Positions 1 through 44,782 of a stretch of 64,000 bases of DNA are shown here, in pieces. Each line of letters begins with the position of its first letter. Positions within the stretch are counted from its first letter, which is position 1. Source of the DNA: Diadema antillarum (Eukaryota); contig NW_027270987.1 in the NCBI RefSeq assembly GCF_040938485.1, positions 1,302,001-1,366,000 on the forward strand, given 5' to 3'. Position numbers and translations under genes: made by a program. The notes beneath the pieces are model-generated. The model worked only from the letters and a program-made list of their open reading frames with translations. It searched no databases and was not told the DNA's origin.

Positions 1-45
1 AGATAACTTTGATTGCAGATATACGACTTGTATAACTGGGCATTT

Positions 46-3000
46 TCAGATTCCGCCAAAACCAATGACCTTCATATTCTGGAACTCGTTCAGTCCATAT
101 TTCGACCCTTCCACGCCGAGACCAGACTCCTTGACTCCCCCGAACGGTAGGGCGTTGTCGAAGATGAAGGTGTCGTTGACACCGACCATGCCGACTTCCA
201 TCCGCTCGGCTACCCGCCAGATCTGGCCGATGTCGTTGGAGTAGAAGTAGCCCGCCAGTCCCATCCGCGTGCTGTTGGCGATGGTGACCGCTTCTTCCTC
301 GGTTTTGAACCTGCGTGAGAGGGGTAACCATGGCAACAAAACATCATCTTGAAAGATACATGTACATTGTTGACAGCTACACAGTGCTCTATTCGTAACT
401 ATTTATTTGCCATGGTGCAATATCTGAGTACCAACTTTGATTCATACAAATATTTCTTAACGTTAAATGTTATTGCGTTATCCAAATAAGTATATACTAA
501 TATGATTACGAGCTGCTTTCTAAAATACGGACATTGACAATGAAAAAAGCAACTTCCCAATAGTTTCACAATTTTCGCTGCAATGGGAGGCATTCATTTG
601 TCTGTAACTATCGATTAGGTCATTTAAAGTGGTTTAGCTAAAATGGAGTTGAAGTGGGGGAGAAAACACATGAATTAATGGGTAGTCCTAATGATAATAA
701 ATGATAAGAAACCGGTTTACTGAAATAAGTTAGAAAGGGCTAATAATGTGTGGAGGACGAAAGATGAGAGGTGGGTTGAGATTTCTGCCAAGTGGGTTTA
801 GCTGGAAAGAAAATGAAGTTTAAGACCATGTGCTTTGTGGCCTCTACAATATTTGCCAACAGAGCAATACAAAGAAGTAGTACAAAAGGGAGTCTGTACT
901 TATCAGAAGAAACTTTATATTTCTTATGTCATTTTTTTCTTTTCACATATATTTCAAAATCCTTAAAAGATATATTTTCTGCTTTAGTCTTTCAGCCCAA
1001 TTGTCCTTCTTATTCACAGCGGAAGAAAGATAACCCAAAAGTATTTGAAACACGGCAGTTCCAAACGCCTCTTATACGATAGGTTTACTCTCGTCAACTT
1101 TACGAGACTGCTAACTGTCAATTGGTTTAAATTTGTGAATTTGGTTTAAATTGATTTAAATTCGTGACGGACGCAGAGCATCTCTGTGACGTCACTCACT
1201 TGATGATGGAAGCAAGAGGACCAAAAGTCTCCTCAGAGCAGACGAGCGCCTCCTTCGGAATGTCGCAGACGACTGTCGGCTCGAAGAAATTCCCGCCGAG
1301 TTCCGATCGCTTGCCTCCCACCAAAAGTCTCCCGCCACTCTTCACGGCATTTTGAACGTGGCGCTCAACCTTAAAAGAACAATCAAGGGGATAATCTTTT
1401 TATTTTTGGCGCACACAACGTCATTTACACTACACAAACCAGCGCTGCAGAAAGCTTGAGGCTGCAAGGTTGACTCTGGTGCATAAAAAGTCAAATAAAA
1501 ACATATACTTCCAGCAGTACAACTCTGAAGTCGGACTTTAATTGAAACAAGTAGCAGTACTGTCTCATCCAAGCAAAACAGTTCAAACGCTTACGAATGG
1601 CTTCATTCCCTAGCTAAGTCCATTGAGCAGTTCAGTCGGTTAATTTGCAGATACCGACAGTGCTCAGTCATTACAGTGCAAACAGTGAAAAAAAACCCCG
1701 GGCCAACTGGTATGCTGGAGAACACAGACTTACTACCAACAGGAAAGCAGTACATTTGTGTTGTCATGGAGACTATCTGGCCTCCATTCTGTGATCCATT
1801 AATACCTTTTCCAGTCCCTTTGCGTTGATCAGGGGGCCCAGTGTGGTCTTTGGATCCATGCCGTTGCCCACGACGAGACTTGAAGTAAGCTTGGCCAACT
1901 TTTGACAGAACTCATCGTAGATCCCTTCCTGGACCAGGATCCTGTTGGCGCTGATGCAGACCTGGGTGTAGCAACAAGCCAAGGTTGGTTTTAATGCCAT
2001 GTTGACGTAACTATCAGAAAGGAGACACCCCGATTTACCTACCCGTGTCTATTAACTCCTTATAAATTTTTGTCAAAGATAAGACAATTTCCATGATGAT
2101 ACACACAACAGCAAATAAAGAAGCGTTCTAATCAGTTGTTCATTCGTAATTGGTTGCAATTATTACTTTTATGTAGCTTTGTTACTTTGCCATACGTACA
2201 AAGGTCTTATCAATGTGATGAAGTCACCCTTTTGTAGAAGAGTACACAAGTCACTTTCCCCTTTTGAAGTTGAAAAACAAATGATATTCCGATATATTAT
2301 GATGCCCTGTCCTTGGAAAATATTCATGATGACATGGTCCTGAGACATTACAGAAAGTTTGCCATTGCCCGTCTAGTTCCTTATTCGACTATAATTAATC
2401 TAAATAATATGCATACTGTCCCTCCTTGAAACACAATCCAGCATGTCCAGAGTGTTACAACCCAGCCCTGAAGTTGACACCTTTTAGCCAAGTCTCAATC
2501 CGAGTTTGCCGATGAATATATCCCTTACTTCAGATCTGTGACTGTCTGTTTTCGTCCTAGTTTACAATGTTAATTTCTCAAACACCCATTCATGTTACCG
2601 TAGATAATCATTTGAATCCAATGGTTCCTGACGTCGTTTTCAGTTGATGTAAATGGAAGAACGTTCAGTAAAGGGTACTGATAGAATCCAGTGCGAAATA
2701 TCGGAATGACCACGCAAACCAGCGATGTTTGAAGGGAAATTTAACGAAAATCTCCTCTCACACTACTTCTCCTTATTTTGCTCTGAATATATGTATAGTC
2801 CATCTACACTCACCTGGCCTGATCCGTAAAATTTGAGTATGAAACAACCCATAGAGGCCGCATCGACATTGGCCGAGTCAAAGACGATGAAGGGCGAGTT
2901 TCCCCCGAGCTCCATAGATACCTTCTTCACTGTGCTAGCCGACTGAGCCAGGAGAATCTACAGCAAACAAATATAGGCCTATATATTATAGTCACGTCAT

Positions 3001-6000
3001 AACCGGCAAGGTCATATTTAGGTACGAGCAATGCCATATGTTTTAAATGCTGTCATTTTGTTCTTATTCTCCAACAATTGTGTTTCCTTCACATTTTGAA
3101 GCCATACAGAAACACACAAAGAAAATGCATTCTCTGACCGAGTAGGCTCCCTAGATTTCAGATTTACCAGTAGACCTACGCTAGTTGTATATAGAACATG
3201 GCTGACGCCACGTTTTCTAAAGAGGGTGGGGGGGGGGGGGGAGGACCAGTTTATATTTTCTGGTGCTACTTCCGGGTTTCATCAGCTAACAAACAATGTT
3301 TTATCGGCTCTGCTGATATAACTTACATTAACCACATTCTATGTTTTTACTTGTGCCACTTCCGAGGTTATAAAAGAAAAGTGGTTATACCCTATATGTT
3401 TTCCAATGCATTCTGCAAAAAAAAAAAAAAAAAAAAAAAACCGTTCCGCTGGTTGAAGTAACTGCCAACGTGTAAAAACTTATCGAGAAATCAACTCTAA
3501 GACCTCTTTCAGCATCCTGTTTGAATAGCTGCTGTATGATACTACATGAGACGTGATTGATATTTTCACACATTGATAAAGAATAAGTTAAAGAGCCTAG
3601 ATGTACATAGTGCAATTGGAGGATGTGAGCTAAAAACTGGTGCGCATCATACCCACCTTGCCCGTGGCTGTCGATCCAGTGAAAGAGATCTTGGACACGA
3701 GCTCGCTCTCGCACAGCACCTTGCCGACAGCCGGAGCGTTGGCGCGAGAACATGGCACGACGTTGAAGACACCGTCTGGGATGCCAGCCTCCTTCATCAT
3801 CTGAGATTGAATAAACAATAGGGTGATGGGGGGGGGGGGGGGATAAAATCGTTAACAAAGGTCCCTGAGGCGTCGAACTATACTGATTATATCCCCAATA
3901 CTGCCTTATTGAGAGCTATTGAAATGCATCAAGTTCATTAATCGCAAAAGCAATTGCTAGATTTTATTGTTATTAACATTATCATGATTAACATCATGTT
4001 TATCACTATTTATTCCATTATCACAATTTAAGTTTTTCTTCGTCATAGATCCTTTTTTTTTTTGGGAGTGGGGGAGGCTAACTAAGGTCCCTGCGGCGTA
4101 GAACTAATGATTATGTTTCCAATATTTCATTAAGAATTATTGAAACTATTGAAAAGTTTATCTATCGCAAAGACAATTGTTAGATTTCATTGTTGTTGTG
4201 AGCATTGTCATGATTAACATAATGTCTGTTTATCACTACATTGTATTCTATTATCGTAGTTTGAGTTTTTCTTCATCAGTGACCCTTTTTTGACATGATA
4301 ATGATACTACGATGCTTATAGCGCATATCACTACTGTAGAATCTCTTTACGCTTTACAGGATAAGGTTGAAAATGGAAAATTATAATAAGAGTAGTAAAT
4401 GATCATAAATGATCATTATCATGGGGAGAAGAATTCCACCAATCACTGGTCGAGATATACTTATCAACATCTTTACCATCATTTTCATTATCATTATGAA
4501 CATCAATGCTACTACTATCACCATGATCACTATCATATCGCTATGCGTGAGTGTAGTCGTAGGCCTCGTGATCACGCTTTAGAAATAGTTTTGTTAACAT
4601 ACAATATTGCCAAGAAAACTATCTCGCATCTGTTGCACCAGGCGGATCATAAATACCTTTAAAGCCTTAATTAGGCCTACTATTGAATTCTCTCTTCTTT
4701 GCTTTTCCTTAGCCGTAGAGATTTTCAATACAGCAAATATTTCCGATCTTCTCGTATGAACCTATTATGGTGTTTTCCAAAAATCAAAGAGGACAATTTT
4801 GTTTCTTGGGGGGCATTTCATCAACGAGTTCGTCGGAAATTTTCACCGACAAATTTGCTATCAACCAATCAGACGCAAGAATTTCAGTAGCTTTTAACAG
4901 TTGTCAGTGTAAATCACTGACAAGAAGTTTCATGAAACGGTCCCCTGGTCGTGTCATAAAACCGGACTTACGTCACAAAGGGCAAGAGCTGAAAGGGGCG
5001 TGTCCTCTGAGGGTTTGATGACGACAGTACATCCCGCGGCCAGCGCCGCTCCAGCCTTCCTCGTGATCATCTCCATTGGGAAGTTCCACTGGAATTCACC
5101 ATGACAGTCAGAGTAATCATCTAGTAAATGTTATCAATCTCTGTCGCCAGAGGGCTTACTTTAAAAACACTTCACAGCCAAGAATACACCCATTATAGTT
5201 AATGTTAAAGGACAAGTTCACTTTCTCAAACATGTGGGTTGAGCGAATGCAGCAATATTAGTAGAACACATCATTGAAAGTTTTGGGGAAATCCCACGAT
5301 CTGTTATGAAGTTATGAATTTTTAAAGTGTCTGCGCAATCACTGCTGGATGAGAAGACTACTACAGTGTATGATGTCAGATGCGTACAACGATATAAGGA
5401 AAATAAAACGAGAATTTCACAAAACTTTACTTTTTGAATAAAGTGGAAATTTCTTCAACTTGTTACTGACATATGTTAAGGGTAATATTATTCCCTCTGC
5501 CTCCTAAAAGAGAGAAGTGAAGTGACCATCTGTTATGCGAGAAAATTGAAAGCATGTTGAATTTTCTTTATACTTTCTTTATATCGTTGTACACATGTGA
5601 CATCACAAGCTATAGTAGTCTTCTCATTCAGCCGTGACAGAGCAGAAACTTTAAGAATTCATAACTTTTGAACAGATTGTCCGATTTTCCTCAAACTCTC
5701 ACTGATGTGTTCTACTAATATTGCTGCATTCACTCAATCCACATGTCTATGAAGGAGAACTTGTCCTTTAATGTTACAGTGTATGACTGTTTCTTCCCTG
5801 AGCCTGTGTTGAATGTGCAACGAAATACATGTACTACATTCCAACAGGTAAATCACATATCACGCTGAAGTGTTGATAAAGATTGTGATTTTCACCAGAG
5901 CCTATGTGTGAAACGTCCAGTCTTGGCAGCTTAGCACTAAAGTAGAACTAAAGGATTTCGGAGTAATTTTAGATGATGAGGGCTATGTAACAAACAAACA

Positions 6001-8904
6001 TCACCTCTCAGTATACTATATGAACAGCACATCACGATCCATTGTTACAGTACTCATACACGGAATTTATGGTTAGTCTGTTTATTTTTCATCGATTTCG
6101 CGAAACCTCCGTTCTAGAATCTGTGAGCAGTGTCATAATCCGATTTTAAAATGAAAACAAATATATTATGACGAGTATCAGACTTTTGACAGTATAGCTT
6201 CTGGCATTAAATGACTCTAATGATTTGTCAAGCGCCATTTTGGTAATATCTCTATTTTGGCATCTGGCAACATTAATCCAGAGGGTACTCACAGGGGTGA
6301 TAAGACCAGCCACGCCCACTGGCTGTCGAATCACCAGGGCCCGTTTATTCTTCTGCAGGTTGGTATGGACGTCCCCGACAGTGCGCGTTGCTTCCTCCGC
6401 GAAGTACTTGACGAAACCGGAAGCACCCCTAGCTTCATTGGTCGATTCCATCATCTTCTTGCCCTAACAAGAGAACAGAAATGTGTGGCGGTAAACATCT
6501 TGTGTTTTCAAAGCGCTAATATGGGTGGAATTACAATTATTGTTCTTTTTGAAATAAGTTACAATCGCTAGCAATTGAGACACTTCTGAGCTCTTCCACG
6601 AGTTTCTCAAAATGACCCCCAAAGTTTAGACATGCTCTCTTTGAGGACCCTTTCTTCTCATTCTTTTCCTGAAAGTCCACCTTCTTAGCAGCCTCAAGTT
6701 AAAACTCCACAGAATAATATTATGTTTGGGAGTTCTACTTTTTCAAGATCCAAAGTGAGTTTTCGTATGGTACATTCGTACAAGTGTCTCTCTGTATGGT
6801 CGTTTACTAAGCTAGTATGGCATCCAATGCACTTAGCCACCACAGTTCATTCCCATGCACACCATCTTAAGAATTGCATGTTTCATGTCTAAGTTATTGC
6901 AGAGTATTCGCTCATGCCATCCTTCTTTGCTAAGATAATGATTTAAATCAAAAGAGTGTTACCTAATTTTACTTTCTCTCTCAATCATGTTAAAACTACG
7001 GCCAATCCGGAGTCTACAGCAACATTTATATTTACACTATCAGCACTTTTAATCCGTATACATGCACTGCTCAGTAATTTAGATTAAGTATAGGAATGAC
7101 GCTTATGTTTACAGAGCAACCAATTTGTGAAATATCATTCTGTTGCTCTTCCAAGGTATTACTATGGCGTTCTGGGCTGGTAAGCAGGATATGGAGCAAT
7201 TACTAGAAAAGAAAATATATATATAAATCTCGGTTTAACATCTGATCAACAATTTCTCATTTGTTTCAGAGTGTGCGGGGTAGAGAATTCACTTCTAAAT
7301 GGTGTGTAACGTTTTTAATCAATTTTTCCTCTGATCGTGATCAAGATTGATCGACTTGCTTCATTATACAGTCATAAAACTCAGCGTATAAATTATCATT
7401 GTATTTCCGTTAACAGTATATATTTTTCTTTATTACGATGTTTATCTATCTTGCATCACGCTGTATAATATAATATGTTAAAGTTTTGCTGTAATTGTGT
7501 TTTGTTGGAAATGAATTCAAATGAAATAAAATGAGTGAAAAAAGGTGAAAACTGTGTAATGCAAAGATTTAATGTGACGGTCCCTGACAAATGTTTATCA
7601 AAATGGATAATAAAGATATGAGAGTGTATATGATATCATACGTGATTAAATTCCCACCAAATAAAGATAGATTTGCAAATGGTACAACCGAAAATAAAAT
7701 TTATCCCTCCACGGATTTGATAACATAGGATAATTGAAAGTGATAATGCAAAAAAAAAGAAAAAAGAATGACGTCCAGATGTTATCCAGTATGCAACGTT
7801 AGTAATTTACGAAGAATATTAACTTAATACAGAGTTTCAATGTCCATACCGCGCCCATTTTTTCTTTAAATGATCCTGTATTACCAGATTTTAGACCCCA
7901 AACCTATGAAATGCTGACATCGAAGAACTTCGGCCTTTATAATGCTATAGAATGCAGGTAAGAATATATCACTGTATATAGTTCCAACAATTCAGTGGAA
8001 TCACTGCGTGAAGAACCACCCTCCCCCTTCAAAAAAAAAAAGTTTACCTACTTGCACTTCAACTTTGGACTTTACCAGGGAGGTGGAAAGCTCCTATCTT
8101 CGCAAGACCCATAAAGTATACACACAAGGCATACATGTTAACAATATACACTAAAAATTGTATAGGAACCACATGAGAGCATCGCGTCTGACCTCAACTG
8201 CCCGTTCCACGTTCACCAAACAAGAGGCGGTGAAAACCTCACCAATTTATTAACAATGTCACGTGACTGCAATCGTTCCGCCTTCAAAATTGTTAACTCA
8301 TCCCAGAATCCTGTCCTCTGTGAACTTACATTTTCAACAGTAATAATCTTTGCGAGGTTTTCGACATTTTCATCCATCAGTTGGCCGAGACGCTTTAAAA
8401 TGGCCGCCCTCTCCTGCATCGTACAAACAAAACACAAAGGAAGACAAAACAAAATATGACAAGCAAACAATGAACATATTGAACACATCCTGTAATGGTA
8501 CAGGTGGTGGTCAATTCACTCCATGATACAGTGTGCGATACGACCAGCAATTAGATGGTGATATAGAGGTTGGTATAATATATTGCTTGAGTACTTGACC
8601 ATTGCATATCTTTATAAAGATCTTGAATTGCTCAATAATGATAAACGACATCAACTTAAAGACCCTTCGTATTTTGAAAAAGCCGTCAGTATGTGACATC
8701 TGTTAAATATTCTATGCAAGTCTTTGAATGATACACCTGTGCATAACATATTGAAGACCTAGCATACACGATTTTAAACAATACAGATAGACCTGATCAT
8801 GCATTTCAGCGTTAGCCGTGGAAACATGGGGACATAATGACATGAATCATGCTTATAGTGCCATGTCTAATAAACAGCAGTAGACGGGACTTTATCACAC
8901 ATTG

Positions 8905-8939
<35 letters not shown>

Positions 8940-10574
8940 GCATACACAGTAGATGCACACACAAAATCTATATGAATGCCATTGTACATGAAACGCTCAA
9001 TACGATAATGTGATAAAGGAGCTCATGGGCTCCAATGCCAGGATGCACCCTCGACCTTTCCGTACACACTTCCAGGAGAATGTCAACATTATACACTTGT
9101 ACTTACTATGCAAAATAAACACCACGACCTGGCTGCTTTCCCAACGAAGAGTCAACATTTCATCGTGACTTGACGAAATTAGTACTACTAGTATTACCTA
9201 GCAAAATCGTGGAACAATATTTGTTGTGTTTGACCGTTCATTGGTCAATATCTCGTACGATTCGATGAAGGTCAAGACCAATGGAGGACATGCAGATTAA
9301 TAATTGTTTGGGGAGTCTTTTGTTTTGCATAGAATTTGTCGTATGAAGCCAGGCGTGTTCCTTCTAGTAACCTACGCATGAATAGGCCTACGTGTACCTC
9401 CCGAACAGATTTATTTCGATAAAAACTCGCCGCTGCAACTCTGTTAATAATACACATAACATAATTAGGATCAAGTTCCACCTTTTGCAATCGTTATCTT
9501 GCCATATTCCTTTATAGCATCTGTGTGTGTGCGTGTGTGTGTGTGATGTGTGTGTGTGCATTCTTTTCAGACCCAAGTGCTAAAACGAACACACAAACAT
9601 TGGCTACACTATGAAACTAAAATGGCGCTTTAACGTATAATAAATGGACATGGCGTCTAACTTCGAATCAGGTCAAAGGAAGGTGTGGAAACGTCGGATC
9701 TCGCGGATTAACACAGGTCGAAATGTTTTCAATTTGGTATCACTGTAATGTTTTCTAGATGTCTCACTTTTTGACCTTGTTTTGCGAGAGATAACATTTT
9801 GCCATCTGATGATATACAGAATCTGACAGACACATACAAACATTATCGTATGTGGAGTCGTCGACCCGTAAATGAGAAGTGGACAAACGAGTTTTAGGAA
9901 CAGTATTCAGGACTGCACTCGAAAGTATAGTTTCATAACTACGGAGCAAGACTGGAGTGATGAAAAGGGTGTGGTGTGTACACTGACAAAGAAGTGCGTT
10001 GTCAGAGTGAACAAAACATTAGAAATAAGTAGTTAATGTTATCAACGGACTAACCCTGAAATTTAATCGGTATATGAGTGACCAAGAGTACAGTAACGAG
10101 CGATGTCAGGAATGACACCTGAAGTAGTTTCTATATAACGTATCCGTAAGACTGGAGCAATAATCAAAGGTGTAGCATCTGTTCTGAATAAAAAATGTTT
10201 GACATTTAGACTGATTCCTGAACTTTTTTTAAGGGGGAAATTTGGGAGCGGTGATTTCGGTGCACAAGTCATAGTTTGGAATCATAGAAACTGACCCCAA
10301 GGAGTGAGTTTCGAGGGAGCAAGATTCGAGTAGGCCTATAATGTGCGAGAGTTGCATATAAACCAACCTTCGAAGTGGTTTCCCTCCAAGTTTGGAAGGC
10401 TGTGTACGCCCTTTGGATGGCCGCCTCGGTGTCCGCGGCATCGGTGTCGGCCACGTTGGCGACCACCTCTCCCGAGGCGGGGTTGAGCACCTCGAAGGTC
10501 TTTCCCGACTTCGCCGAAACCCACTCTCCGCCAATGAACGCCTTCTCGCGAATAAGAGGATTCTTGTCCGCCAT
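46..10574 (-). CDS. ALDH5A1-like: SSADH-like aldehyde dehydrogenase, paralog B (9 coding exons, 485 aa, no mitochondrial presequence)
   Basis: Exons assembled by hand, all GT-AG: 10574-10368, 8413-8330, 6463-6293, 5088-4972, 3800-3657, 2957-2814, 1961-1806, 1369-1200, 310-46 (TGA 46-48). The frame stays open across all junctions. ALDH motifs: WNFP, KPSEDTP, FTGST, SMELGG (catalytic Glu), GQVC (catalytic Cys), [15 protein letters not shown]. Confidence 0.95.
3854..4290. repeat. Diverged tandem duplication of a ~225-bp unit in intron 4 of paralog B
   Basis: Units at ~3854 (aaggtccctgaggcgtcgaacta...gtttttcttcgtcat) and ~4080 (aaggtccctgcggcgtagaacta...gtttttcttcatcag) align end to end with many substitutions. 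Confidence 0.8.
5209..5767. mobile_element. Non-autonomous Kolobok-type MITE
   Basis: Perfect 11-bp TIR AGGACAAGTTC/GAACTTGTCCT flanked by TTAA at 5205-5208 and 5768-5771; no ORF. Confidence 0.85.
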
Positions 10575-22804: not shown

Positions 22805-24575
22805 TCACACACCGCCGAAGCAGGCATACTTGATCTCCATGTATTCGTCGATGCCGTACTTGGATCCCTCGCGCCCCATTCCCGACTCCTTGATCCCGCC
22901 AAAGGCCGACACGTCGGAGGAGATGAGGCCCTCGTTGATCCCGACCATGCCAACTTCCATCCGCTCGGCGACCCGCCAGATTTGGCCGATGTCGTTGGAG
23001 TAGAAGTAGCCCGCCAGTCCGACGCGCGCGCTGTTCGCGATTGTCAGCGCCTCCTCTTCCGTCCGGAATCTTGGGGAAAAAACAACAACAAAACTAAACA
23101 TGAAACAAATAACAACGTGATAAAAGGGTAGAAGTTTAAAGGGTACCGAACAGACAGATTCCCCTTCCTGTTGACATTGCCTTTGACTGAGTTAAAGGTG
23201 AAAACACCTTGAAAATTAATTTGTGTATGTATAAGAAGCAGAAAAAAAACCCCTGAAGAAATACAGTGCTACGTTTGAGGACATTCGGATCAAACCTGAG
23301 AAAATTATGATTTTTTTTTTTGTCGTTGTTGTTACGACAAATCAAAAATAAACTGCAATTCTGTGATGTCACACGCATGCTCACGCCATTGGCGCTGCAT
23401 TACAAAATGATAAAAAAAAAGAATTTCCCTGAAGCAAATCCCCATCATACAGGCACCCTTGAAACAAATACTATATTACATATGACATAATAATTCGGTA
23501 CAGTGCTAATGCATCCAACTTGGCACCTTCACACCCTCAAGTTGAAAAAACACATTGCCAACAAACCTAACACATGAACTTGATTTCTCATCAGTTAATA
23601 GTTGAATTAATTCATATATCTAAATTACTAATTTGAATAAAGCCACAACCAGTAATGCTACTCTCGCTCTTAGATCTTATGAAGAATTGGCCTTGGGTGC
23701 ACCACTTCCGGATCAAACTAGCCTTACAAACTAGTCTGGATTCCAGACCGTCGGGTTGTACTAATTTCCTTCCCAGAATATTAACGCCCTCTAACGATAA
23801 AAGAAATGGCAGGTTCAGCTGGATGGTTCTGTAGACAGTCTTCGGCAAAGGCAGCTGCGAGTAGAGCGCATTTGTGAAAGGAGTACAGTTGGCAAAGGGT
23901 CTGGTAACCGCCTGAATAATGTGATAAACAAATGATACTACAGGCAAAACTTGGGTGAAAGATCCAAAATGACCCAAATAAAAGGATAATTTCTGGAAAA
24001 TATTGTTTTTATCAATTACCTCTAGTACATCTAGATGTTTGATGACTGTCACATGAAAAAAAAAAGACCATTTCACAACCATTCACAACCCTTCATAATT
24101 TGGTCTTTCAGTAAACGATAGCCACGAAAACCCTATCTCACTCACTTATTCATTTGTTAACTGAAATGAAATGAACAGAAAAACATGCAAAATCTGACTG
24201 ACAAGATTGTTAGCTTAGGTTTGACATGGCAACCAGCAATATCAGTCATACCTAAGTTATTAAGTATTCGCAACAAAATTTTAGGAAAAGTCACCGAATT
24301 AGGTTTAAATTGATTCAAAGGCGCAAGAGTGGCAAATGGAGATAGGGGAAACAATGTGCCCCTGGGATTTATAGGGTTACAGGTCAAAAGCAAATTAAAG
24401 TTATTAAACGTTATTAAGCAGAGTGGTTTCTTTGACATTACATAACACACTTCCTAACCAGAACGGATTTAAGCAAGATTGTTGACTCAAATAGAAGTTA
24501 GTGAGATCATCCCCACTCCCATAAAAAAACGACAAAGAAACAATCAAACGAAATAAAACACTCCCCTCCCCTCCA

Positions 24576-24624
<49 letters not shown>

Positions 24625-27600
24625 TGGAAGGGGGACTGGAACGCTTGGGATTAATGTTCAAGGAAATCCAAACTATCATCACTATGTCTATTTAATCATG
24701 ACTTTATTCAAGTTGAAGGCAATGTGAGTAGAACATTTACAAAAACCAGGTCCACCGTTTTTTCAATACGAAGTGCAGGTTTAAGTTTTTAGAGTTACGA
24801 AATAACTGTTGAAGGTTACATTACCACAACAAAAGATACATTATCATGCATATGATACTTTCGAATATCAATCAGTTATCTCAATCTTCACTATCTTAAT
24901 TTTTACGTGACCCTGTGCCCCAAAATCCCCACAATCACCAACTAATGATAAATACATAAATCCATCTCTACGACTATAAACCATTATTTCAGAATATACA
25001 GAAACACAAACACAAAATTCTACATTGTTCGGCTATCGCCTTTACCCATGGCCCACTCTTTCTCAATAAAATCACTATCGATCTACACTCAGTTAAAAAA
25101 AAAATACATGTAATTAAAACCTTTACCACCAAAACACATTTAAAACAAAATACAAACAATTACCTTGTGTTCGCAAGGCAAAAGATATAAACTCAACTTT
25201 CCAGACGTATTATTTATCCATTTAACACCCTGTGACCTTGTGACCCGAGATTCCCTCCCCTTTCCATCAGAAACGAAACTTAATCAATGTAGTGTACTAC
25301 GTATACGCCTTAAACCTGCGGCTAATACTAAAATTTAAAAAGAAAAATCTATTTCAATACATATCTCAAACAATATTCTGAAATCACCGCATAAAAACGG
25401 TTACGGATAGACATGCATATTGCCTCCGGTGACACTTCGTCGCGAAAACATAATGGGTGTGAATATCAGCTTGTGAAGCCCTACGGATCTAGGTACCGTA
25501 CCTCCCTAAAAGCTTTCTCTTTTCTGGCTTAGAATATCGTAAAGAGGAAGGTATGGCGAGTTTAGAAAGTATCTGAAAGAAATCATTTGGACGAATTTTG
25601 GAATTTGCTGTTTTCAGAATTGTTACCCGGAATAATGAGTCCCCTTGCCCAGATTTCTAACGCATAGAATGACACGGAGTAACTCTTATCCTGGGTGTCC
25701 CGCACGATTGAACTATACTTTTCTACTTTCCTTTGATGTGCATCCTCGAGGTTGGTTTCAATGGGGACAGTTAACTCAACAATCGTGATTTTTTTTTTCT
25801 TCTTCCCACAAAATAAGTAAATCTGGGCGAAAACTTGTGGTGGGAATATGTGCAGGTACGGTGCCCCCGGCAATTGAATGTCCTTTTAAATCAGTGTAGG
25901 TGTAGACGTTCCCATTGAACAGATTTTCAAGAAATGTTTTGTGTATGTACCTCAGTAAATCATTATGTCGCCACTCATATCTAAAAGAGAGGAAGAAATA
26001 TGGGCAATTTGAGAGTATAATGATGCAAAGTACCTGTGGTGCCCAGAAAAAAACAAACACATTTATCACTAATAAATAATAAAATATACGATAGTGACGT
26101 GACCATTGTGACTCTCTTTCAATAGCGGAGTTGTTGCTATCATTAAATATATTTATTTATTTCAGAATGGCTTGATCAGTATCAGCTGCTTTTCATTATT
26201 GAATGCAATAAACTTGTATCACACCAGTGGCAAGGAATTCCAGGTCAGCTGCAGTAACAATTTGAAAAAAAAGGAAAAAAATCGACAGTATAACAAATAT
26301 CAAAACAACAAATAAAAATCGTGTCTCTGACTCTATACACTCTTTTAACGAAAGGAAATACAAAGGATTACAAAAAAATCTCGAGTTGATATTAAAGTAC
26401 ACATGCGCAAGAAAGCAGCCATACGTCACTTTTTTCTCTTTTTTTTTAGACAGTTGGGGGGGGGGGGGGCTAGTGGCAAAAGTACGCAAGATGGGGGGAG
26501 GGGGAGGGGTAATCACGGAGAGCTTCGATGGCATACTGGACTATCTTTATATCCGTTTACAGAGTTGACTGAGTTGAGTTGACTGATGCATTTGCAGCAC
26601 ACACACACATCCGTTGATTTTTACGTCGCCGTGTTGATCACAAAGCTGGCACTGGTCCCGAGGAGCGTCTATTGGCATCACTCTGATCTACATCATTTTC
26701 AACGGGATCATTCTGGGTAGTGTCATTGCGAAGGGTCGATGCACTGGTCTTGTCATTAGCCGTTTGAAACCCTCGAGCTATGAAAATGACGGCGATCATT
26801 CCAATGCTTTAGGTGTAAGTACACTTACGGTCTCCGAGATGGAAATCTCCGTCTTGCACAGCCCGTCAGGTTCAACTTTGTGGGCAGTTTGGATGAGGAC
26901 AAGAGCATACATGATTCTCCAGTTTGTTATCCCTTTCGTAGTTTGTATGTGAAGGCTCCAGCCCGGTACTTCGTGGACTACTCAGTACGTTTGTATCTAT
27001 TGGTCCTTACACCAGCTGCCAGCCATAGATTGGACTGATGCGTTAGGTGACGAACATACTAAACTCCGGGCAATAACAGCAAAGACGATCAAACAGAGTT
27101 GCATATCTCATAAGGCTCTCCAACAATGTCCCTGAAAAGCAGACTAGATAGAGTACGTATCAAAATCACACACGTGATATATTCAGGCTCTGCAAAATTT
27201 GCATGTAAAACGAAGTACGGGAATATAAAAGTTTCAGCGACATTTCTCCGTCCGTACAAACCACGGTCAAAACTGTCTTAAAACAAGAGTAATTCTTGCC
27301 TATGAAAGAATCACAGACAATGACGAACTAGGACTGACTACAGTCCACCGATGCACAGGTACTTGACGTTCATATACTCCAGCATGCCGAACTTGGCCCC
27401 CTCCTGTCCTCGCCCGGACTCTTTAAAGCCCCCAAATGTGGCGCCCTCGGTTGAGATGAGGGGCTCATTAACCGCCATCATGCCGAACTCGAGCCGCTTG
27501 GTTAGACGCCACACCTGCCCAATGTCTCCAGTGTAAACGTAGCTCGCGAGGCCGTATCGGACGCTGTTGGCTATAGCAATCGACCCTAATCCTAATCCTA

Positions 27601-30600: not shown

Positions 30601-33600
30601 CGGGGGGGGGGGGGGGGGGGAGGGGTTCCAATGAGCTAGTCATGAAGGGTATCTGACTTATCAACCAACACTTACTTTATGATCGGGGCCAGAGGTCCGA
30701 AGGTTTCTTCTCGACAGACGAGGGCGTCATTCGGAACATCGCGAATAACGGTGGGCTGGAAGTACGACCCGCCAAGGGCGTGTCTCTGGCCTCCCACCAG
30801 GACCTTGCCGCCACGAGCCACGGCATCGTCCACATGCTTCTCCACCTGTAGACATCAGAGAGAGAAATGACGGCAGGTATTGTTTGTTTGTTCATTTTCC
30901 ATCTGAGAAGATGGTTGGATAACCAATATTCAGCTACGATAAGCTGGTCTCGCATGGGCTCCAGTTGATGTGAGGCGGAACACTTCACCGGGTTAAACAC
31001 GCTGCTCTTTACGATCTGAATGAATGAAGCGGAATCTTTTACGTGCATGAGATGTGGCTCTCTCACACACGGGACCTTCATTTTATGTCCTATCCGAGGG
31101 ACAGAGTGTTTTGCCTCTTGCTAGAGGGGGACGGTATCATTACACACAACATTGCTCAGTCCAGACTCGGGTTCGAACCCGGGTCGCTTGGGTCTGAGGC
31201 AGACGCGCTACCGACTGAGCCAACTCACCACACTAAAGTTTATAACAGGGACTCACTGTTAGCTCCAGTGAGTTTCGACAAAAATCATGAAAATAGTAAA
31301 TAAATCAAAGAGTCAGCAAAATAATGCAGGAAGAAGCAAAGTTGGAGTAACACTTAGCTATAACGAACTGTGTCGTACAGTAGTACGATCAAAATGTAAT
31401 GTCTGGCTTTGATTTCAATGGACTGAAATTAACTAACGTTTCAGCCAGTTGATTGCATTCGAGTATTATAATGATAGAAATGGCGAAAGGATGACATTTT
31501 GAAATTAGCGTGATACACACGCTGTCATTCAAGATAGACTTTGGAGAAGCTCTTGAATTTAATGTGCGAGGAGCGACCAGTGAAAGAAAGGGAAAACAAT
31601 TCCAACAAACTAACAAACTAACAAACACATAATCTTGCGACTACACAATGTCGTATTCGAAGCAGTTATACATACTTTCCTAAATTTCTATGGTTATTTG
31701 CTGTAATTGAATGCTCTGCTGTTCGCATTGACTTCTGAGCGTTCTGTATCAGCTTTCCGATCCACACAGGGGCCTATAAGGAAGATCGTATCATTAATGC
31801 CCAGGGTCATGGCTGTGAGATTACTCAGTACTTTTCAACATGGTATGGCAGCATAGATTTACAAACAGAAAGAGGAAGCTCTGAAAGAGGAAATTACTCA
31901 ACAATGTGATATCGGAAAGTCTAGAAAGTTCACTGATCGGCGCACAAAAGTTATATACATGTGTGGATGGGTTTCGAAATGCTTTCTCACTATCAGCGAA
32001 ATAAAAATCCTAAAAACCTATTGAGATATCAACAAGTCTTCGCAAAACTCTATACTTCACAGCTGGAGTGTAAAGCAACATGTTTCACTGGTTTTGATTG
32101 GATATAGTACTTAGAGACAATCATATAGACTTCTGTAGGCTAGTCTTGATCTTTTCCTCTTCTTTNNNNNNNNNNNNNNNNNNNNNNNNNNNNNNNNNNN
32201 NNNNNNNNNNNNNNNNNNNNNNNNNNNNNNNNNNNNNNNNNNNNNNNNNNNNNNNNNNNNNNNNNNNNNNNNNNNNNNNNNNNNNNNNNNNNNNNNNNNN
32301 NNAACTGAATACTCACGAACATGTTTGGCGTATGCTTGCACATGTCACATATCACCCTTTCCCCCCTCCCCCTCCCCCTTCCCCTCCCCCCCCCCCCCCC
32401 CCCCAATGACGTTTCACGTGAATATACCCTCTGCTCCCTCATCGTGCAAGTACTACATTGATAGAGCTTGGATCAAAGGCTAGCACCCACCTTCTCCATA
32501 CCACTGACGTTGATGAGCGGTCCCTGGGTGGTGGCCGGGTCCATCCCGTCGCCTACTACCATCTTCTCCACCTCGGCGCTCAGTTTCTGGCAGTACTCGT
32601 CGTACACTTTCTCGTGCACCAAGATTCGATTAGCGCAGACACAAGTCTGACCGAAACAAAACAACAACACACACAAACAAAAGGGGAAAAGGTCAAATTC
32701 ATTCTGGAAGTGTTGCATGTACTGTAGCCAGTTATCAATGTAAAACTTCCACACTATCCCTCATGAATGATTCCAAATGCTGACAATCTCAAGTACACGA
32801 AAGTAACTGTTAACTGCTAAATATGTTAATTGATAAATCGGTTAACCGCTATCCACAATGACAATTCTGGAAAGCTCACAACTCGTTAATATTTCACGCA
32901 TCACAAATAGGTCACACACGTTTCACATCACTATGATATTTTCACAAATTTTTGCGTCTTAATCCAATGCTGCCAAAACACGACGGTTTCTGTTTCTTGA
33001 TGTTTTCTTCTTTATAATTCCTTTGCTATTGGCAACATCTTAGGTATATAATATCAATATGACGTATAGATGTTGTGCCGCTGACAAGGGAAACGTCTTA
33101 ATTTGCGAAATTAAATCAATACCAAATTTAGACAAAGAGCAGCAAACTGTTTTTCTTAAGAATAATAACAGACGGTCGAGTTGATCATACTCAGTACCTG
33201 GCCCGATCCGCGGAATTTGCAAACGAGCGTGCCCGCCACGGCAGCATCCACGTTCGCTGTTTCGAAGACAATGAAGGGGGCGTTGCCGCCGAGCTCCATG
33301 GAAACGCGTTTGACCGTGTCTGCAGCTTGCTTCAGGAGAATCTGGGGGCACGCACCCAGAGAGTGTGTGGAAGACAGTGAGTAACATACACGAAAATATA
33401 GAAACTAATACACACATAATTAGATAATGCACATGAAATACGTACCAATACACAAGAAATGTCGGATGTTTAATATCACGGCTGTTTTCCGGGCTTCCGG
33501 GCAATCAATAGGTTATCAATCATGCACTTAATAATCACAAACAAATTAAACACTTCCACCGACATTTCATAGATATTCATAGCATTTATGATACATCGTC

Positions 33601-36600
33601 ATAATGGTCAGGCTACAAAAACCTCTAAACATCTTGCCTACGAGAACGCAACTTATCTCATTACCCACAAATATCGGACTTCTCTAGTCGGGGTTTTAAC
33701 CATATACAGTTATTCACAACATGGCTTTTGAATGTGTCAGCCTGGAAAATGAATACGGAGAAATATCGTTTAAAGTGAATGAGCAGTAATTTTGACTTGT
33801 CGTGGAGGGTCTAGGTATACCTTTCCTGTATTCGTGGACCCGGTGAAGGAGATTTTGGCCACCTGCGGACTCTCGCATATCACCTTGCCCACTTCGGCGG
33901 CGTGAGCGCGGGAGCATGGCACCACATTGAACACACCCGCTGGAAGACCCGCTTCGTTTGCAAGCTATGGGGAGAAAAGAGACGCTACAATCTTGATCAC
34001 AATGTCTGGCTTTAATACTACGTTATTTCTCTTAAAACATCTTCGAAAGAAGTGTAAATTAGCTGCAGTGACGCACAGTGTAATTACTATTGAATAAATA
34101 TGAAATCATAGATTTTCAGATTTCTTTCACTTTCCTATACAGATTTCGCAATACATGTACTTTCCTCACATTACAATGATGAAATATTCTGAGGATTCTG
34201 CACTGTATGTACAGATGATATCAAATACAAAGCGTAACTTCTACAAACAAAACTACAGCTACTCCAAAATAGGTAAAACTGACAAGTAAAGCTTTTTTTA
34301 AGTAATTGATTGTAATGTCTGTCTTTTTTCTGCTCACGCGCGAAGTGGAATTATGAACTATATTCATACAGCCAGTCTACGCAAGCACGTTCCTCCAGTT
34401 TCCATACCTCACACAGGGCCAGAGCCGACAGGGGAGTGTCTTCGGCCGGTTTCACCACCACCGTGCAGCCAGCGGCGATGGCGGCTGCTGCTTTCCTCGT
34501 GATCATGGCACTAGGGAAGTTCCACTATACACAAATGGAGATAAGACAGAGGTAAGCGTTAGTAAGAAAATAAATGAAATATGAACAAGTCCATTATTAT
34601 GACACAAACTGTCACAGCACGATGCTCTGAATATAGGAAAAACCCTTTCAGCGCTACGATTTACAAAAACGCCGTTGACAATGTATTGTATGACTACGTT
34701 TTTACGAAGGTAACGACAGAATTAACAATCACTTTTACTAAAAGATATCCATTTCCTAGATCGCCTGAAGAAAACTTCTTCCCATTTTGCTCTTACAAAA
34801 CAACAAACATAATTACAACAAACATAATGAGCAGCAGCTACATTTTCCTGATTTTATTGAGATATGTTATGTTGTCAAGTAGCTATTGTTCTGTGTACAT
34901 TTTGATAATATTAACGTCGAAATAATAATAAACAATATTGCGGGGGATTTTTATGTGTGTATACATAATCTGGTCCCAAGTCTTAATTCTGGTTATTGAC
35001 TGACAATACATTGGAACATGATTATCAATGTTCTGTTGGCATTGATAAACCATCAGCGCCAGTCTGAAAGATAAAATGTGTGCTGCTGCTACTACTAACT
35101 GCTACTGACTACTACTACCACAACCACTGCTATTTAGAGTATAGCAACAAAACAGGTGCATTGAACAGCTCGTTACTAGATTTCCAGGGGAATACAAGCA
35201 GCAATATATTTGAAAACATTTTAGTAAACCGGCCAATTGGGACGTGTAACGTACGGGTGTTATCATGCCGGCTACGCCTACTGGCTGCTTCATGAAGATC
35301 ATCCGTTTGGTCTTGAACGGCGACGGGACAACGTCCCCGTAGGCCCGCTTGGCCTCCTCAGCAAACCACTCAAAGAACGACGCTGCGTATCCGATCTCGC
35401 CCTTAGCTTCCGCCAGTGGCTTGCCCTGTCGTGTCGATCGGTAACCGTCAATCCGCGCGACATGGGGAAAGTTTGGGGTGTGAATAAAGAGAGTTTACAT
35501 GATAAGACTGAATATGTCTTCTTTAAAGTTGTTTCCTTGCACGATGAGATGGTATATTATCATACATAGTCGGTACGTGGATTATCGCAAACTTCTACTA
35601 ATCATCGGTCAGAACAGTTAAGTTGTCAGACATTGCGGAATGGGAGTCAGATATGGCGATTATTAAGAATTAGAATAAAACGACGCACAAGTATAGACCT
35701 AGTTGTAAAAAAAAAGCAAGGTGAAGACGAAAATAACATTGCGCTGTAAGTCGGTGATACGTGCGTTAACGGGAATCATATTATCATTATAGTGCGCAAT
35801 AGCGATTATTATCGGTTTATCAATACAAATTAATCATGATTCGTTACTATAGACATATTACTGCGATATATTTAACATGATCACTTCATCTTACGTTTGA
35901 TCCACGGTGGAACATATGTTATCCGTCATATCAGCAGAATTACCCTTATTTAATGACTGGGAAACTGTCAACATTCGGAATCATGTTGTCAATGATTACA
36001 CCTAGTGTTTGAATTTTACAGATACAACGTCGATAATCACGTCAGATAGAGAATAAAGGATTTACCTCCTCTCAAAAAAAGGAAAAAAAATCGAGTGAAA
36101 ATATTCACTCTTGAAGGAGTGAATACAAAAAAGAGTGAATTTAGAGTGAAATTGGAGTGAATTTTGAGTGAAAATGTTCATCTTCACTCGTTTTAGAGTG
36201 ACCTCAGGGATCACTCCAAAATCTTCGAGTGATCCCTGAGGTCACTCCAAATTGAGTGAAATGAATGATATAAATGATATACGTATATTCTTATAAGAAC
36301 ATGTTTACGGCATATAAATTATGGTTGCCGTCATTACGTACGTTTTCAGCCGTCAGGATCTTTGCCAGCTTCTCCTGATTCTGCATCATTAGCTCAGCCC
36401 ATCTTCGTAGGATGATACTCCTCTCCTGCCGATTGGAACAAATATCGATTCTTTGTTATCGTAACCCATTAGGTCCTTGGGTCCTTACTGCAGAAATAAT
36501 CACTTTGCCCTCTTTAAATTGGAAACTCTACTTTTGTTGTTGTTTTTTCCCTGCGTATACTAAAAAAAGGATTAGTTGAAACCGTTAAATTCATCGGATC

Positions 36601-39600
36601 TTCACAAAATTAGAAGAAAAAAATACAGTAAATAAAAAATAGCACAATATGTCAACATCTTCCGAGTCCCAGGCATAATATATAAACGCAGACACGTAGA
36701 CCTATCATTCTGTACCTTACGCTTCTGAAGAAAAATTAATGCAATCATGTGATTCAACTTATGGTGTTGTATATGCTATCAACTATAAAGAGAGAGAGAG
36801 AGAAGGGGGGGGGGAGAAGAAGGCAAAGCAGATGCAATGTCACTGGTTCACCAAATTCATATGAATGTTCATGATCCTTCATATTTACGCACACTGTGTT
36901 TCGGATTTATTTTACGTGTATGGCCGTTGATGGAACAATAATTCTTGTAACTTGGCAAGCAGCCACGGGAAGACGGAAGCAAGTCTCGTCCAAGGGACTG
37001 GGCAAAGGTAACGAAGTACCTTATTCGAGAGTTCATCTGCTGATGCTGGTGGCTCGAACCAAGAGTCTCAATATTGAGAACCCATGATCATAACCACTGA
37101 GCCGTAACACCTCCTAGTATGTTGTATTCTTTTGGAATTTCGTATCCTTTTGAATCTATATCTTGTGGAAGATACACTATATTCGTGTATTTACGTGCAT
37201 ATTCCACATCATACTTTTGAACTTTATCAAATGTAGTTTTGAAAGCTCGTCCCGGATCGTGCTATATTATGCCAGACAATTCTGTATAGCAGGACAATGT
37301 GCACCCTCCATTGACAATATTGTCTCCCCGTGTGCACCCTCCTTTTTCTGTGTATCAACTGATTGGCCATCCTAGTCATTTATTTCAAAGAGAGCTTTGC
37401 GCAAGATTTAAGTCTCCCTCATACGGGGCGATTGCCTTCAGTCATACCATGGCTAATCCGCTTGTGGACAAAGAAAATGACATTTTCAGAAAATGGTATT
37501 AAGAGGCTTAATGGTCATCTCTCAGAGAACAAGCAGGAGGGGCTTATATCGTCTTGCATCTTCGCAGAGAGAAGAAAATTACAGAAGTCCTGCGATTCCA
37601 GTGAATTATACGGACATGAGTACATGTCATGACGTTTTGACTAAGATATCTCTCAAAAGGCAGTATTCTGATTCAAATTTGAGATTCATTATAATTATAT
37701 AGAACATGCGTTACCCCAAATAAAAGTGTTGATAACTGAGAAATGGCTGATTTTCAGTTTTCTTCCCTTTGTTAAAGTTGAGAAGTATTATATATGTGAA
37801 GGTCTCGATCGGCCTAAACACTCTTCAGATTATTTTTCATATGAGGATGGGTCCGGATCATGGTTAGTATCCGGGCGTGTGTATACACAGACCGAAAATA
37901 AGAGACTTTGCCAACATCCTTCTTGTCTCTTTCAGATTAGTATAATATGCATTTCACTTGCCACCGCGGGAAGGCGGAAAGATTGTTAAAAAAAAAGTGG
38001 CAGACTACTTGATATTGGTCTCCACTTCAATCCGTATCGAAAATACAATAACACAATAACAGTACACTGTGTACGAGTTGTCTTTGTTTTAAATTGAAGT
38101 AGAGAGAACAAAAAGAATGCAACTCTGATATCGTCAATAGCCTGGGATTATTTTGGATTTATATTGTACTCATGTACATTCAAAGTCATTTCCCTTGAGC
38201 AATTCAAGTAAATTTGACGGACTATTTCCCAGTACTGAGATGAAAAACAACCTCGCATTATAGGAATATGGGGGGGGGGGGGTCGGACACAGCTCTCTGG
38301 TTGTTAGGGGCGTTTATTACATTAGATGGCATGAATTGAACATGGGATAGCGCCCAGAATTATTGATGTCACGTAACTTTAAATGATCTGGTAACTTGTG
38401 TACTCAGATTTATTGTACTTCAAATTTACGAGCCATTAACTACTAGTGATCCTAACCCACAACTACGACGGGTGCCAGAGATTTTGTCCGATAATGATTA
38501 ACGGGGCAAATTCCACCAACAGAAGCAGGAACGTAAAATAGCCCATCGCATCGCAGGCTATTAAACCGGAACACGCGTGACATTGAATGTTAAGATAACT
38601 TGTTCTACGTGAAGGAGAATAATAATTTATATCTGTCAAAGTTGAATTCATCATATATCTATAACAAGGTTTAATACGCGTGAGATTATACCTGTCGGAA
38701 AATTTTCAAACAATGCTTGTGTGTGTCTACGATAAGGTGCGCGATAACAATATTTGCGATTCAATATAACGTTTATGACTTCCATAAAATGAGTCGAATG
38801 ATAAAACTTTTGAACGTTTTATAATGAAACAGTACAATCATGTACTTGCACAAAGAAGCGCTGTCTTTTCTGTTATTTTGTGTTGTTGTTTGTGTTTGTC
38901 CCCAACGAATTGAACAAAATGCTCCTTATCCTCTAAGTGGACAGTTGATTGTATGAAATGTGGGGAATTATGCCCATATGAATAATATTATTAAAAATAA
39001 CAAAATACCGGTGATGTTCAGAGTAAAACTTCACCACCTTGCAACGGATTTTGAATAAATCGATCACTGATAAGATGGGAGTTCAGAGTGCATGTTTACT
39101 TCAGTTTCATAAGAAATGCGAAATAATCTACCTTTGATCTTCTCTTCGTATTCACATGGTTTGCTCTTCGTCAATGAAATACCGTGTGTCTATGAAGTGG
39201 CCTATCAATATCGTTGTAATATATCTACGCATTACAAGTGTATGTGTGTGTGTGTGCGTGTGTGTGTGCGTGTGTGTGTGTGTGTGTGCGTTGGAAATTC
39301 TTGGAGAGGCCTGAACGGGAACGCATGGGAGAGGACTTTGTATTATTCATGTCTTGTACCAATGCACGCTTTATCATTCATAATGAGAATCTAGTTATAT
39401 AATGGAAACAAATGAGCATCTTACGTTAATTTCTTTGGGATAGGGCTAAGAGGAATAACATTTTTGCATGGTGTAAAAGCAAAGGAAGTGACATTGTTTT
39501 TCTTCAAGAAACTTATAGTACTGTTGATGTAGAGGAAAGGTGGAGCTCAGAGTGGGATGGCTCAATGTTTTTCAGCCATGGATCAAACCATAGTAGGGGA

Positions 39601-44751: not shown

Positions 44752-44782
<31 letters not shown>

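What the first reader, a model, noticed from the sequence alone, without database searches (positions are those of the whole stretch)
182..261. 80-bp gene-conversion patch shared by two deeply diverged SSADH paralogs
Seen: 182-261 (paralog B exon 9) and 22941-23020 (paralog A exon 9) differ at only 3 of 80 nt, all synonymous ([27 protein letters not shown] is identical). In the conserved codons a little further 3' ([14 protein letters not shown] vs [14 protein letters not shown]) most third positions differ. Inference: non-allelic gene conversion homogenised this segment and stopped just before the S498 substrate loop, where the copies differ (NDTFIFDN vs NEGLISSD). This is the pattern expected if selection preserves the diverged pocket.
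Basis: partly seen in the sequence, partly recalled or inferred. Interest (0 to 1): 0.7.

Follow-up and report, generated by a model that had tools for sequence, protein, structure and literature searches.

The report
Short conversion patch between SSADH paralogs
Two neighbouring, anciently duplicated sea-urchin genes for succinate-semialdehyde dehydrogenase share one 80-base stretch of near-identity in their last exon, most likely left by an old copy-and-paste (gene conversion) between them; this is a known kind of event, notable here only for being small and between very diverged copies.

Summary
Window 182-261 and 22941-23020 differ at 3 of 80 bases (193, 211, 223), all silent. Elsewhere the two genes share 64% of residues and their silent sites are saturated. 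Silent difference (pS) is 0.21 in the patch and 0.76 in the rest of the gene. The lowest 27-codon window elsewhere has pS 0.48, and equally conserved protein segments have 0.74-0.79. The patch is not an assembly error. Contigs from four public runs (two species, four studies) carry both versions, each with its own letters at 211 and 223, so the homogenisation predates the split of those two species and is not ongoing.

Gene conversion is the best explanation (about 0.6). The paralog pair is the closest pair in the patch but the most distant in the flanks, and trees for patch and flanks disagree. It is not proven. Only two distant echinoderm-like exon fragments could be retrieved, and every pair shows lower silent divergence in the patch. 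A local silent-site constraint therefore remains possible (about 0.28).

The claim that selection stopped the tract before the substrate loop was not tested. Loss of homology explains the boundary equally well. This is an ordinary kind of event. The scan has not noted it on other DNA.

The parts
182..261 (-). Near-identical patch in the last exon of paralog B (27 codons)
   Evidence: 3/80 differences from 22941-23020. pS is 0.21 and pN is 0. Bridged to both flanks by contigs 1-253 and 232-1675 in run X1, and by one contig 48-838 in the sister species.
22941..23020 (-). Matching patch in the last exon of paralog A
   Evidence: A short contig with G at 211 and T at 223 (the A-copy letters) is present in all four runs laid.
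49..310 (-). Paralog B exon 9 (terminal coding exon; stop codon at 46-48)
   Evidence: AG acceptor at the same alignment column in both copies, open frame to the stop. Outside the patch it differs from A at 39% of bases.
22808..23069 (-). Paralog A exon 9 (terminal coding exon; stop codon at 22805-22807)
   Evidence: Its translation matches the last 87 residues of human SSADH chains 2w8n/2w8p, E 3e-39.
1200..10574 (-). Paralog B exons 1-8: 10574-10368, 8413-8330, 6463-6293, 5088-4972, 3800-3657, 2957-2814, 1961-1806, 1369-1200
   Evidence: Exon pairs found by tblastn of B open frames against the A region, with shared AG/GT boundaries. Total 1455 nt, 485 codons, no stop.
30676..47306 (-). Paralog A exons 1-8, aligned part: 47306-47097, 36425-36342, 35425-35255, 34524-34408, 33964-33821, 33341-33198, 32646-32491, 30845-30676
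   Evidence: Intron positions and phases are the same as in B. Residue identity A/B is 64%.
27341..27583 (-). Third terminal-exon-like copy (C) in the last intron of A. It is not part of the homogenised pair; it was included only in the pairwise comparisons and one of the three GENECONV-style runs, not in the trees.
   Evidence: only three exon-9 copies exist in the genome. C differs from A and B at 26-28 of 81 patch bases.

Best explanation
An interlocus (non-allelic) gene conversion copied about 80 bases between the last exons of two tandem, same-strand SSADH paralogs that lie 22.8 kb apart. This reset both silent and replacement differences in 27 codons. The rest of the genes had already diverged to saturation. 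The event happened before the window's species split from its sister species. Since then four GC-to-AT point changes have accumulated: two in A, one in B, and a fourth (181) whose direction is ambiguous. The direction was probably A to B. Shown here: the contrast between patch and flanks, that the patch is real in DNA, and its minimum age. Inferred: conversion as the cause, and the direction. The tract probably ends where it does because homology ends there. Selection on the substrate pocket is not required.
For: 1. Divergence contrast. Patch pS is 0.21 against 0.76 for the rest of the gene. The lowest 27-codon window elsewhere is 0.48, and the most conserved protein windows (exon 4, pN 0.085) still have pS 0.74-0.79.
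2. Codon identity. 20/24 codons are the same in the patch, against 109/276 outside, which equals the independent-usage expectation. Scan-corrected P is 0.003. No codon-column shuffle of 20,000 reached an 80-nt run with 3 or fewer mismatches; the maximum was 64.
3. Rank reversal. In the flanks the A/B pair is the most distant pair (39% nt, pS 0.83) and the orthologs are closer (24-26%). In the patch A/B is the closest pair: 4/81, against 12/81 for winA-L004 and 15/81 for winB-L003 (Fisher 0.031 and 0.006). Independent evolution predicts about 11.5 differences (Poisson P 0.011).
4. GENECONV-style permutation on all polymorphic sites. winA-winB is the only globally significant pair (P 0.003, <1e-4, 0.0004 with 4, 7 and 8 sequences).
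5. Trees. In the flanks winB groups with B-like L003 (100/98), and the AU test rejects a winA+winB clade (p 0.008). In the patch the AU test rejects winA+L004 (p 0.012), and winB+L003 costs 4.2 lnL (p 0.096).
6. Silent-polymorphic codons. A and B differ at 4/12 in the patch and 19/23 in the flanks (P 0.006). The ortholog pairs show no such contrast.
7. Layout. The two genes are tandem, on the same strand and 22.8 kb apart. These, with copy C, are the only exon-9 copies in the genome.
8. No RNA element. There is no Rfam match and no significant fold (z -1.4 and 0.2).
9. Direction hints. The GC3 of B's patch is 0.85 against 0.73 in its flanks (A: 0.85 against 0.87). B's patch is as near to A-like L004 (12) as A's patch is, and farther from B-like L003 (15).
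Against: 1. Every pair, including pairs from distant species, has lower silent divergence in the patch than in the flanks: winA-L004 pS 0.37 against 0.76, L003-L004 0.48 against 0.74. Part of the similarity is therefore a local property. If 0.73 same-codon (winA-L004) is taken as the patch's equilibrium, 20/24 is unremarkable (P 0.18). With a GC3-based expectation of 0.52, P is 0.0015.
2. A silent-sites-only run test is not significant (global P 0.3-0.9).
3. No change is listed in the patch between the window's species and its sister species in either copy, although third positions of the 3' part of B's exon differ at 4/44. This fits slow silent evolution.
4. The residues at the four positions where B-like L003 differs are shared by A, by copy C and, at three of the four, by A-like L004 (Lys for Arg at the fourth). 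They may therefore be ancestral, so the protein level does not call for conversion.
5. Conversion between copies whose silent sites are saturated is mechanistically disfavoured. Duplicates are expected to escape conversion as they diverge (abstract of 10.1101/135152).
6. Only two distant ortholog fragments of unknown species were available.
Confidence: 0.6

Rival explanations
1. No conversion. The 27 codons are under unusually strong constraint at both the protein and the silent-site level (site-specific codon preference or an unrecognised nucleotide-level element). Both paralogs have simply kept a near-ancestral sequence since the duplication.
For: Patch pS is lower than flank pS in all pairs. 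winA and A-like L004 share 16/22 codons in the patch against 22/48 in the flanks, although the flanks are saturated. Patch GC3 exceeds flank GC3 in several taxa, for example L005 0.63 against 0.28. No changes are listed in 161-313 between the two sister species. In the patch tree winA and winB sit near the centre on very short branches. The silent-only run test is not significant.
Against: Other equally or more conserved protein segments of the same gene pair show saturated silent sites (pS 0.74-0.79), so the constraint would have to be unique to this patch. Distant metazoan sequences with nearly the same peptide use different codons (same-codon 0.27-0.57). No RNA family or stable fold was found. 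Under a clock the paralog pair should be at least as different as the ortholog pairs, yet it is less different: 4 against 12 and 15. The patch keeps about seven third-position CpG sites. In a gene body whose CpGs are methylated (assumed, not measured here; general knowledge of sea urchins) such sites would be mutation-prone (read from the alignment).
Confidence: 0.28
2. Concerted evolution that is still ongoing: repeated conversions keep an island of identity between otherwise escaped paralogs. This is a variant of the best explanation, not exclusive of it.
For: An island that stayed similar could keep seeding short conversions. A-like L004 and B-like L003 share two silent states against the window pair, as expected if conversion also occurred in another lineage.
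Against: The A/B differences at 211 and 223 are fixed in both the window's species and its sister species, in four runs from four studies. No conversion has therefore covered these sites since the species split. It is not known whether L003 and L004 come from one species.
Confidence: 0.08
3. Assembly or polishing artefact: one copy's patch was overwritten with the other's, or the two copies were collapsed.
For: None found. The only oddity is that contigs of organism A break inside the patch at 232-253. A k=31 graph is expected to break there because 224-261 is identical in both copies.
Against: Both versions, each with its own letters at 211 and 223, are present in independent runs of two species. 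The B version is joined to B-specific flanks on both sides, and in the sister species one contig spans 48-838. There are only three exon-9 copies in the genome, with no stray haplotig.
Confidence: 0.02

Closest known systems
Non-allelic (interlocus) gene conversion between tandem gene duplicates, as surveyed in human duplicates by Harpak et al. (bioRxiv 10.1101/135152)
   Same: A short tract of near-identity between paralogs on one chromosome. The sequence is GC-rich and has decayed since by GC-to-AT changes. It is detected by contrast with the flanks and by tree incongruence.
   Different: That abstract gives a mean tract of 250 bp and says conversion slows as copies diverge until they escape. 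Here the tract is about 80 bp, and it lies between copies whose silent sites are saturated everywhere else.
Gene conversion among GOT1 paralogs of the copepod Tigriopus californicus (PMC3728101)
   Same: Conversion among enzyme-gene paralogs in a marine invertebrate, with the idea that selection for new function shapes where conversion is tolerated (abstract).
   Different: There, islands of divergence persist in a converted background. Here one island of identity sits in a diverged background. I read only the abstract.
Conversion limited by selection in primate red/green opsin and RHD/RHCE genes (my own knowledge, not checked here)
   Same: Homogenised segments lie next to sites kept different because they set function.
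   Different: Those paralogs are young and more than 95% alike overall, with frequent ongoing conversion. Here the event is single or rare, and old.
Silent-site constraint inside coding exons, such as splicing enhancers or RNA elements (my own knowledge)
   Same: It would also give low silent divergence in a short exon segment across species.
   Different: No structure or known RNA family was found. Such constraint does not predict that paralogs within a species are closer than orthologs.

Membership tests
Interlocus gene conversion tract | A segment whose divergence between paralogs is far below that of its flanks and of the rest of the genes | tested here: met
   4/81 against 71/180 within the exon. 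pS is 0.21 against 0.76 gene-wide, with scan-corrected P 0.003.
Interlocus gene conversion tract | Silent-site similarity not explained by protein constraint or codon bias | tested here: inconclusive
   Met against gene-wide nulls and against equally conserved segments. Against a patch-specific null it depends on the equilibrium assumed: P 0.0015 at 0.52 and P 0.18 at 0.73.
Interlocus gene conversion tract | Tree incongruence: paralogs of one species pair in the tract, orthologs pair in the flanks | tested here: inconclusive
   The flanks are clear: winB+L003 at 100/98, and AU rejects A+B at 0.008. In the patch AU rejects winA+L004 (0.012), but winB+L003 is only at 0.096, and the patch tree is poorly resolved.
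Interlocus gene conversion tract | Significant fragment in a GENECONV-type permutation test with orthologs | tested here: met
   With all polymorphic sites, global P is 0.003 to <1e-4, for the winA-winB pair only. The silent-only version is not significant. The test was my own implementation, not the GENECONV program.
Interlocus gene conversion tract | Donor and acceptor physically able to pair (same chromosome, near, same orientation) | tested here: met
   Both are on the minus strand of one contig, 22,759 bp apart.
Interlocus gene conversion tract | Both copies real in DNA of independent samples | tested here: met
   four runs, two species, four studies. The A copy was seen only as a short contig over the patch, because the stretch laid was the B copy.
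ALDH5A1 / succinate-semialdehyde dehydrogenase | Sequence match to solved SSADH and to the aldehyde dehydrogenase family | tested here: met
   A exon 9 matches human SSADH 2w8n/2w8p with E 3e-39. Exon-fragment relatives carry PF00171. Only exon 9 was searched.
ALDH5A1 / succinate-semialdehyde dehydrogenase | Ser at the position of human Ser498 in the substrate loop (its role is from my own knowledge) | tested here: not met
   Copy A keeps Ser. Copy B has Phe at the aligned position. B is therefore ALDH5-derived, but its substrate is open.

The most novel reading that the evidence does not exclude
The 80 bases are a nucleotide-level functional island shared by both paralogs: either an embedded RNA or DNA element, or a site-specific codon requirement. 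Alternatively they are an island of identity that has been re-homogenised repeatedly over tens of millions of years between duplicates that have otherwise escaped conversion. Either reading would explain why silent sites here are also slow between species.
Probability: 0.2. Interest if true: 0.5.

Novelty: new member of a known kind. Interest (0 to 1): 0.3.

Why it matters
If it is a conversion, it shows that short tracts can still pass between tandem enzyme paralogs whose silent sites are saturated, seeded by a stretch that protein constraint kept similar. This matters for dating duplications and for building trees of this gene pair: exon 9 must be split before it is used. It says little about function. 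The patch encodes a segment that is conserved in SSADH across animals, and the diverged substrate loop of copy B lies just outside it.

Tried and rejected
I redid it from coordinates only.
2. Word searches with the exon-9 translations of B and A gave only two echinoderm-like fragments, P0001/L003 (B-like) and P0002/L004 (A-like). The rest were bacteria or distant animals.
3. The search of all cluster representatives returned no full-length sea-urchin protein. Its top hit, P0215, is an unrelated 200-residue product with two C-terminal segments in tandem.
4. I tried to place the exon translations, each by reference, on a full-length scaffold. MAFFT scattered the fragments. The alignment was discarded and not searched.
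5. The JGI metagenome scan found nothing above 68% identity.
6. L089 comes from a compact genome with very short introns and was not used as an ortholog.
7. RNA structure and Rfam were checked as a source of constraint: no signal.
8. Copy C was checked as a donor and rejected: 26-28 differences in the patch.
9. The spliced proteins were searched exon by exon, by reference. The joined protein was not sent to any search tool, so the annotated full-length orthologs were not retrieved. Exons were concatenated only inside one script to check frame and length. All statistics were computed exon by exon (onward).

Full report
WHAT IS THERE. The window holds two tandem minus-strand genes of the ALDH5A1 (succinate-semialdehyde dehydrogenase, SSADH) type, in a genome that earlier notes of this scan call a sea urchin. 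I found the homologous exons by comparing open frames of 1-22700 with the rest of the window. I fixed their ends from AG/GT sites that fall at the same alignment column in both copies. Gene B has nine coding exons between 10574 and 49 (485 codons, no stop). Gene A has the same nine exons, with the same intron positions and phases, between 47306 and 22808. A third, partial copy of the last exon (C, 27583-27341) lies in A's last intron. A whole-genome search finds only these three copies of exon 9. The translation of A's exon 9 matches the last 87 residues of human SSADH (2w8n/2w8p, E 3e-39).

THE OBSERVATION. 182-261 and 22941-23020 differ at 3 of 80 bases (193, 211, 223). All three are silent, and the 27 residues are identical. 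A fourth silent difference lies at 181. Immediately beyond both ends the copies differ at about 40% of bases.

IS IT MORE THAN CHANCE?
- A and B share 64% of residues.
- Outside the patch, 109 of 276 comparable codons are the same codon. Independent codon usage of the two genes predicts 107.7, so silent sites are saturated.
- Inside the patch 20 of 24 are the same (P about 1e-5). After correction for scanning the whole gene, P is 0.003. No shuffle of codon columns (20,000) gave a run of 80 nt with 3 or fewer mismatches; the maximum was 64.
- By Nei-Gojobori counting, pS is 0.21 in the patch (dS 0.25, pN 0) and 0.76 in the rest of the gene. The lowest 27-codon window elsewhere has 0.48. The most protein-conserved windows, in exon 4 with pN 0.085, have pS 0.74-0.79.

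IS IT REAL DNA? I laid contigs of four public runs on window 1-6000. Two runs are of the window's species (organism A, two studies). Two are of a sister species (organism B, two studies; about 7.6% divergence in the adjoining intron).
- In X1 one contig covers 1-253 and another covers 232-1675, both without a difference. The break lies where 38 bases are identical in both copies.
- In the sister species one contig spans 48-838.
- In all four runs a second short contig carries G at 211 and T at 223, which are the A-copy letters.
Both versions therefore exist in both species, and a collapsed or chimeric assembly is excluded. It also follows that the A/B differences at 211 and 223 predate the species split, so nothing has re-homogenised these sites since. 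The sister species' B exon differs from the window at 101, 118, 135, 145, 148 and 160, and at no listed place in 161-313. The table was truncated, so this last point is probable, not certain.

ORTHOLOGS. The spliced proteins have no reference, so I searched exon by exon, by reference. Two exon-sized gene calls from TARA ocean metagenomes proved to be echinoderm-like. L003 is B-like: it shares B's Val in the motif where SSADH has Arg, and B's C-terminal residues. L004 is A-like. Their introns do not align with the window and their silent sites in the flanks are near saturation, so they are distant. Further fragments (L005, L007, L008) come from other animals. The representative search, a JGI metagenome scan and a scaffolded alignment gave nothing further.

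CONVERSION OR CONSTRAINT?
In favour of conversion:
- In the flanks the paralog pair is the most distant pair (39% of bases, pS 0.83) and the orthologs are closer (24-26%).
- In the patch the order is reversed: A-B 4/81, winA-L004 12, winB-L004 12, winB-L003 15, winA-L003 16. The distances to L003 and L004 predict about 11.5 A-B differences if the copies had evolved apart; 4 are seen (P 0.011).
- A GENECONV-style permutation over polymorphic sites singles out winA-winB alone (global P 0.003 to <1e-4).
- The flank tree joins winB with L003 (100/98) and rejects a winA+winB clade (AU 0.008). In the patch, winA+L004 is rejected (AU 0.012) and winB+L003 costs 4.2 log-likelihood units (AU 0.096).
- Among codons that are silent-polymorphic across the four sequences, A and B differ at 4/12 in the patch and 19/23 in the flanks (P 0.006). 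The ortholog pairs show no such contrast.
Against conversion:
- Every pair has lower pS in the patch than in the flanks (0.37 against 0.76 for winA-L004).
- A run test on silent sites alone is not significant.
- The patch did not change between the two sister species.
- If the 0.73 same-codon rate of winA-L004 is taken as the patch's equilibrium, 20/24 is unremarkable (P 0.18). With a GC3-based expectation of 0.52, P is 0.0015.
Against a constraint-only reading:
- No other conserved segment of the gene shows it.
- Distant animals encode nearly the same peptide with other codons (same-codon 0.27-0.57).
- There is no Rfam match and no significant fold.
I put conversion at about 0.6 and constraint alone at about 0.28.

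DIRECTION, AGE AND BOUNDARIES.
- Three of the four A/B differences are singletons against the other three sequences and are GC-to-AT changes: two in A, one in B. The fourth, at 181, is also GC-to-AT if B is the derived copy, but its direction is ambiguous because L003 has a third state there (alignment). This looks like decay from one common sequence.
- The GC3 of B's patch (0.85) matches A's exon (0.85-0.87), not B's flanks (0.73). B's patch is as near to A-like L004 as A's patch is. A to B is therefore the more likely direction, but weakly.
- The tract is at most about 83 bases. That is short against the 250-bp mean estimated for human duplicates, and it lies between copies that should have escaped conversion (abstract of 10.1101/135152).
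- The 3' end lies seven codons before the position aligned with human Ser498, where A keeps Ser and B has Phe (the role of that residue is from my own knowledge). The 5' end is equally sharp with no such residue nearby. Loss of homology explains both ends, so selection on the pocket is possible but untested.

VERDICT. It is most likely an old, short interlocus gene conversion, which is a known kind of event. The decisive test is exon 9 of both paralogs from a graded series of sea urchins. I could not run it with the tools as they stood.

Noticed in passing
window 27341-27583 (-): The third exon-9 copy (C) keeps an open frame of 81 codons and the conserved glycine-rich motifs. In the flanks it is nearer to A-type than to B-type sequences (36-38% against 44-47% of bases). 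It is as far from A and B in the patch (26-28/81) as elsewhere.
   Followed up: partly
window 3201-3400, 4801-5000, 5201-5800: Summed contig depth rises to thousands and up to more than a million in all four runs, with many opposite-strand joints around 5308-5716. These are very abundant repeats, partly palindromic, in introns of gene B and shared by both species.
   Followed up: no
window 5026 (exon 4 of B, third codon position): A>G is seen in all four runs, including about 40% of the depth in the run that best matches the assembly. It is a shared or ancestral polymorphism, or the reference carries the minor allele.
   Followed up: no
P0215: A 200-residue cluster representative from an unknown source carries two SSADH C-terminal segments in tandem. 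This recalls the exon-9 plus copy-C arrangement in gene A.
   Followed up: no
window 46-48 and leftwards: The sister species' contig stops aligning exactly at B's stop codon, although 947 more bases of the contig continue. The 3' UTR is therefore replaced or too diverged at 80% likeness.
   Followed up: no
L003:346-606: The B-like TARA fragment has one extra codon and a different, Pro/Ser-rich substrate loop compared with the window's B. The loop of the B type therefore varies between lineages.
   Followed up: no
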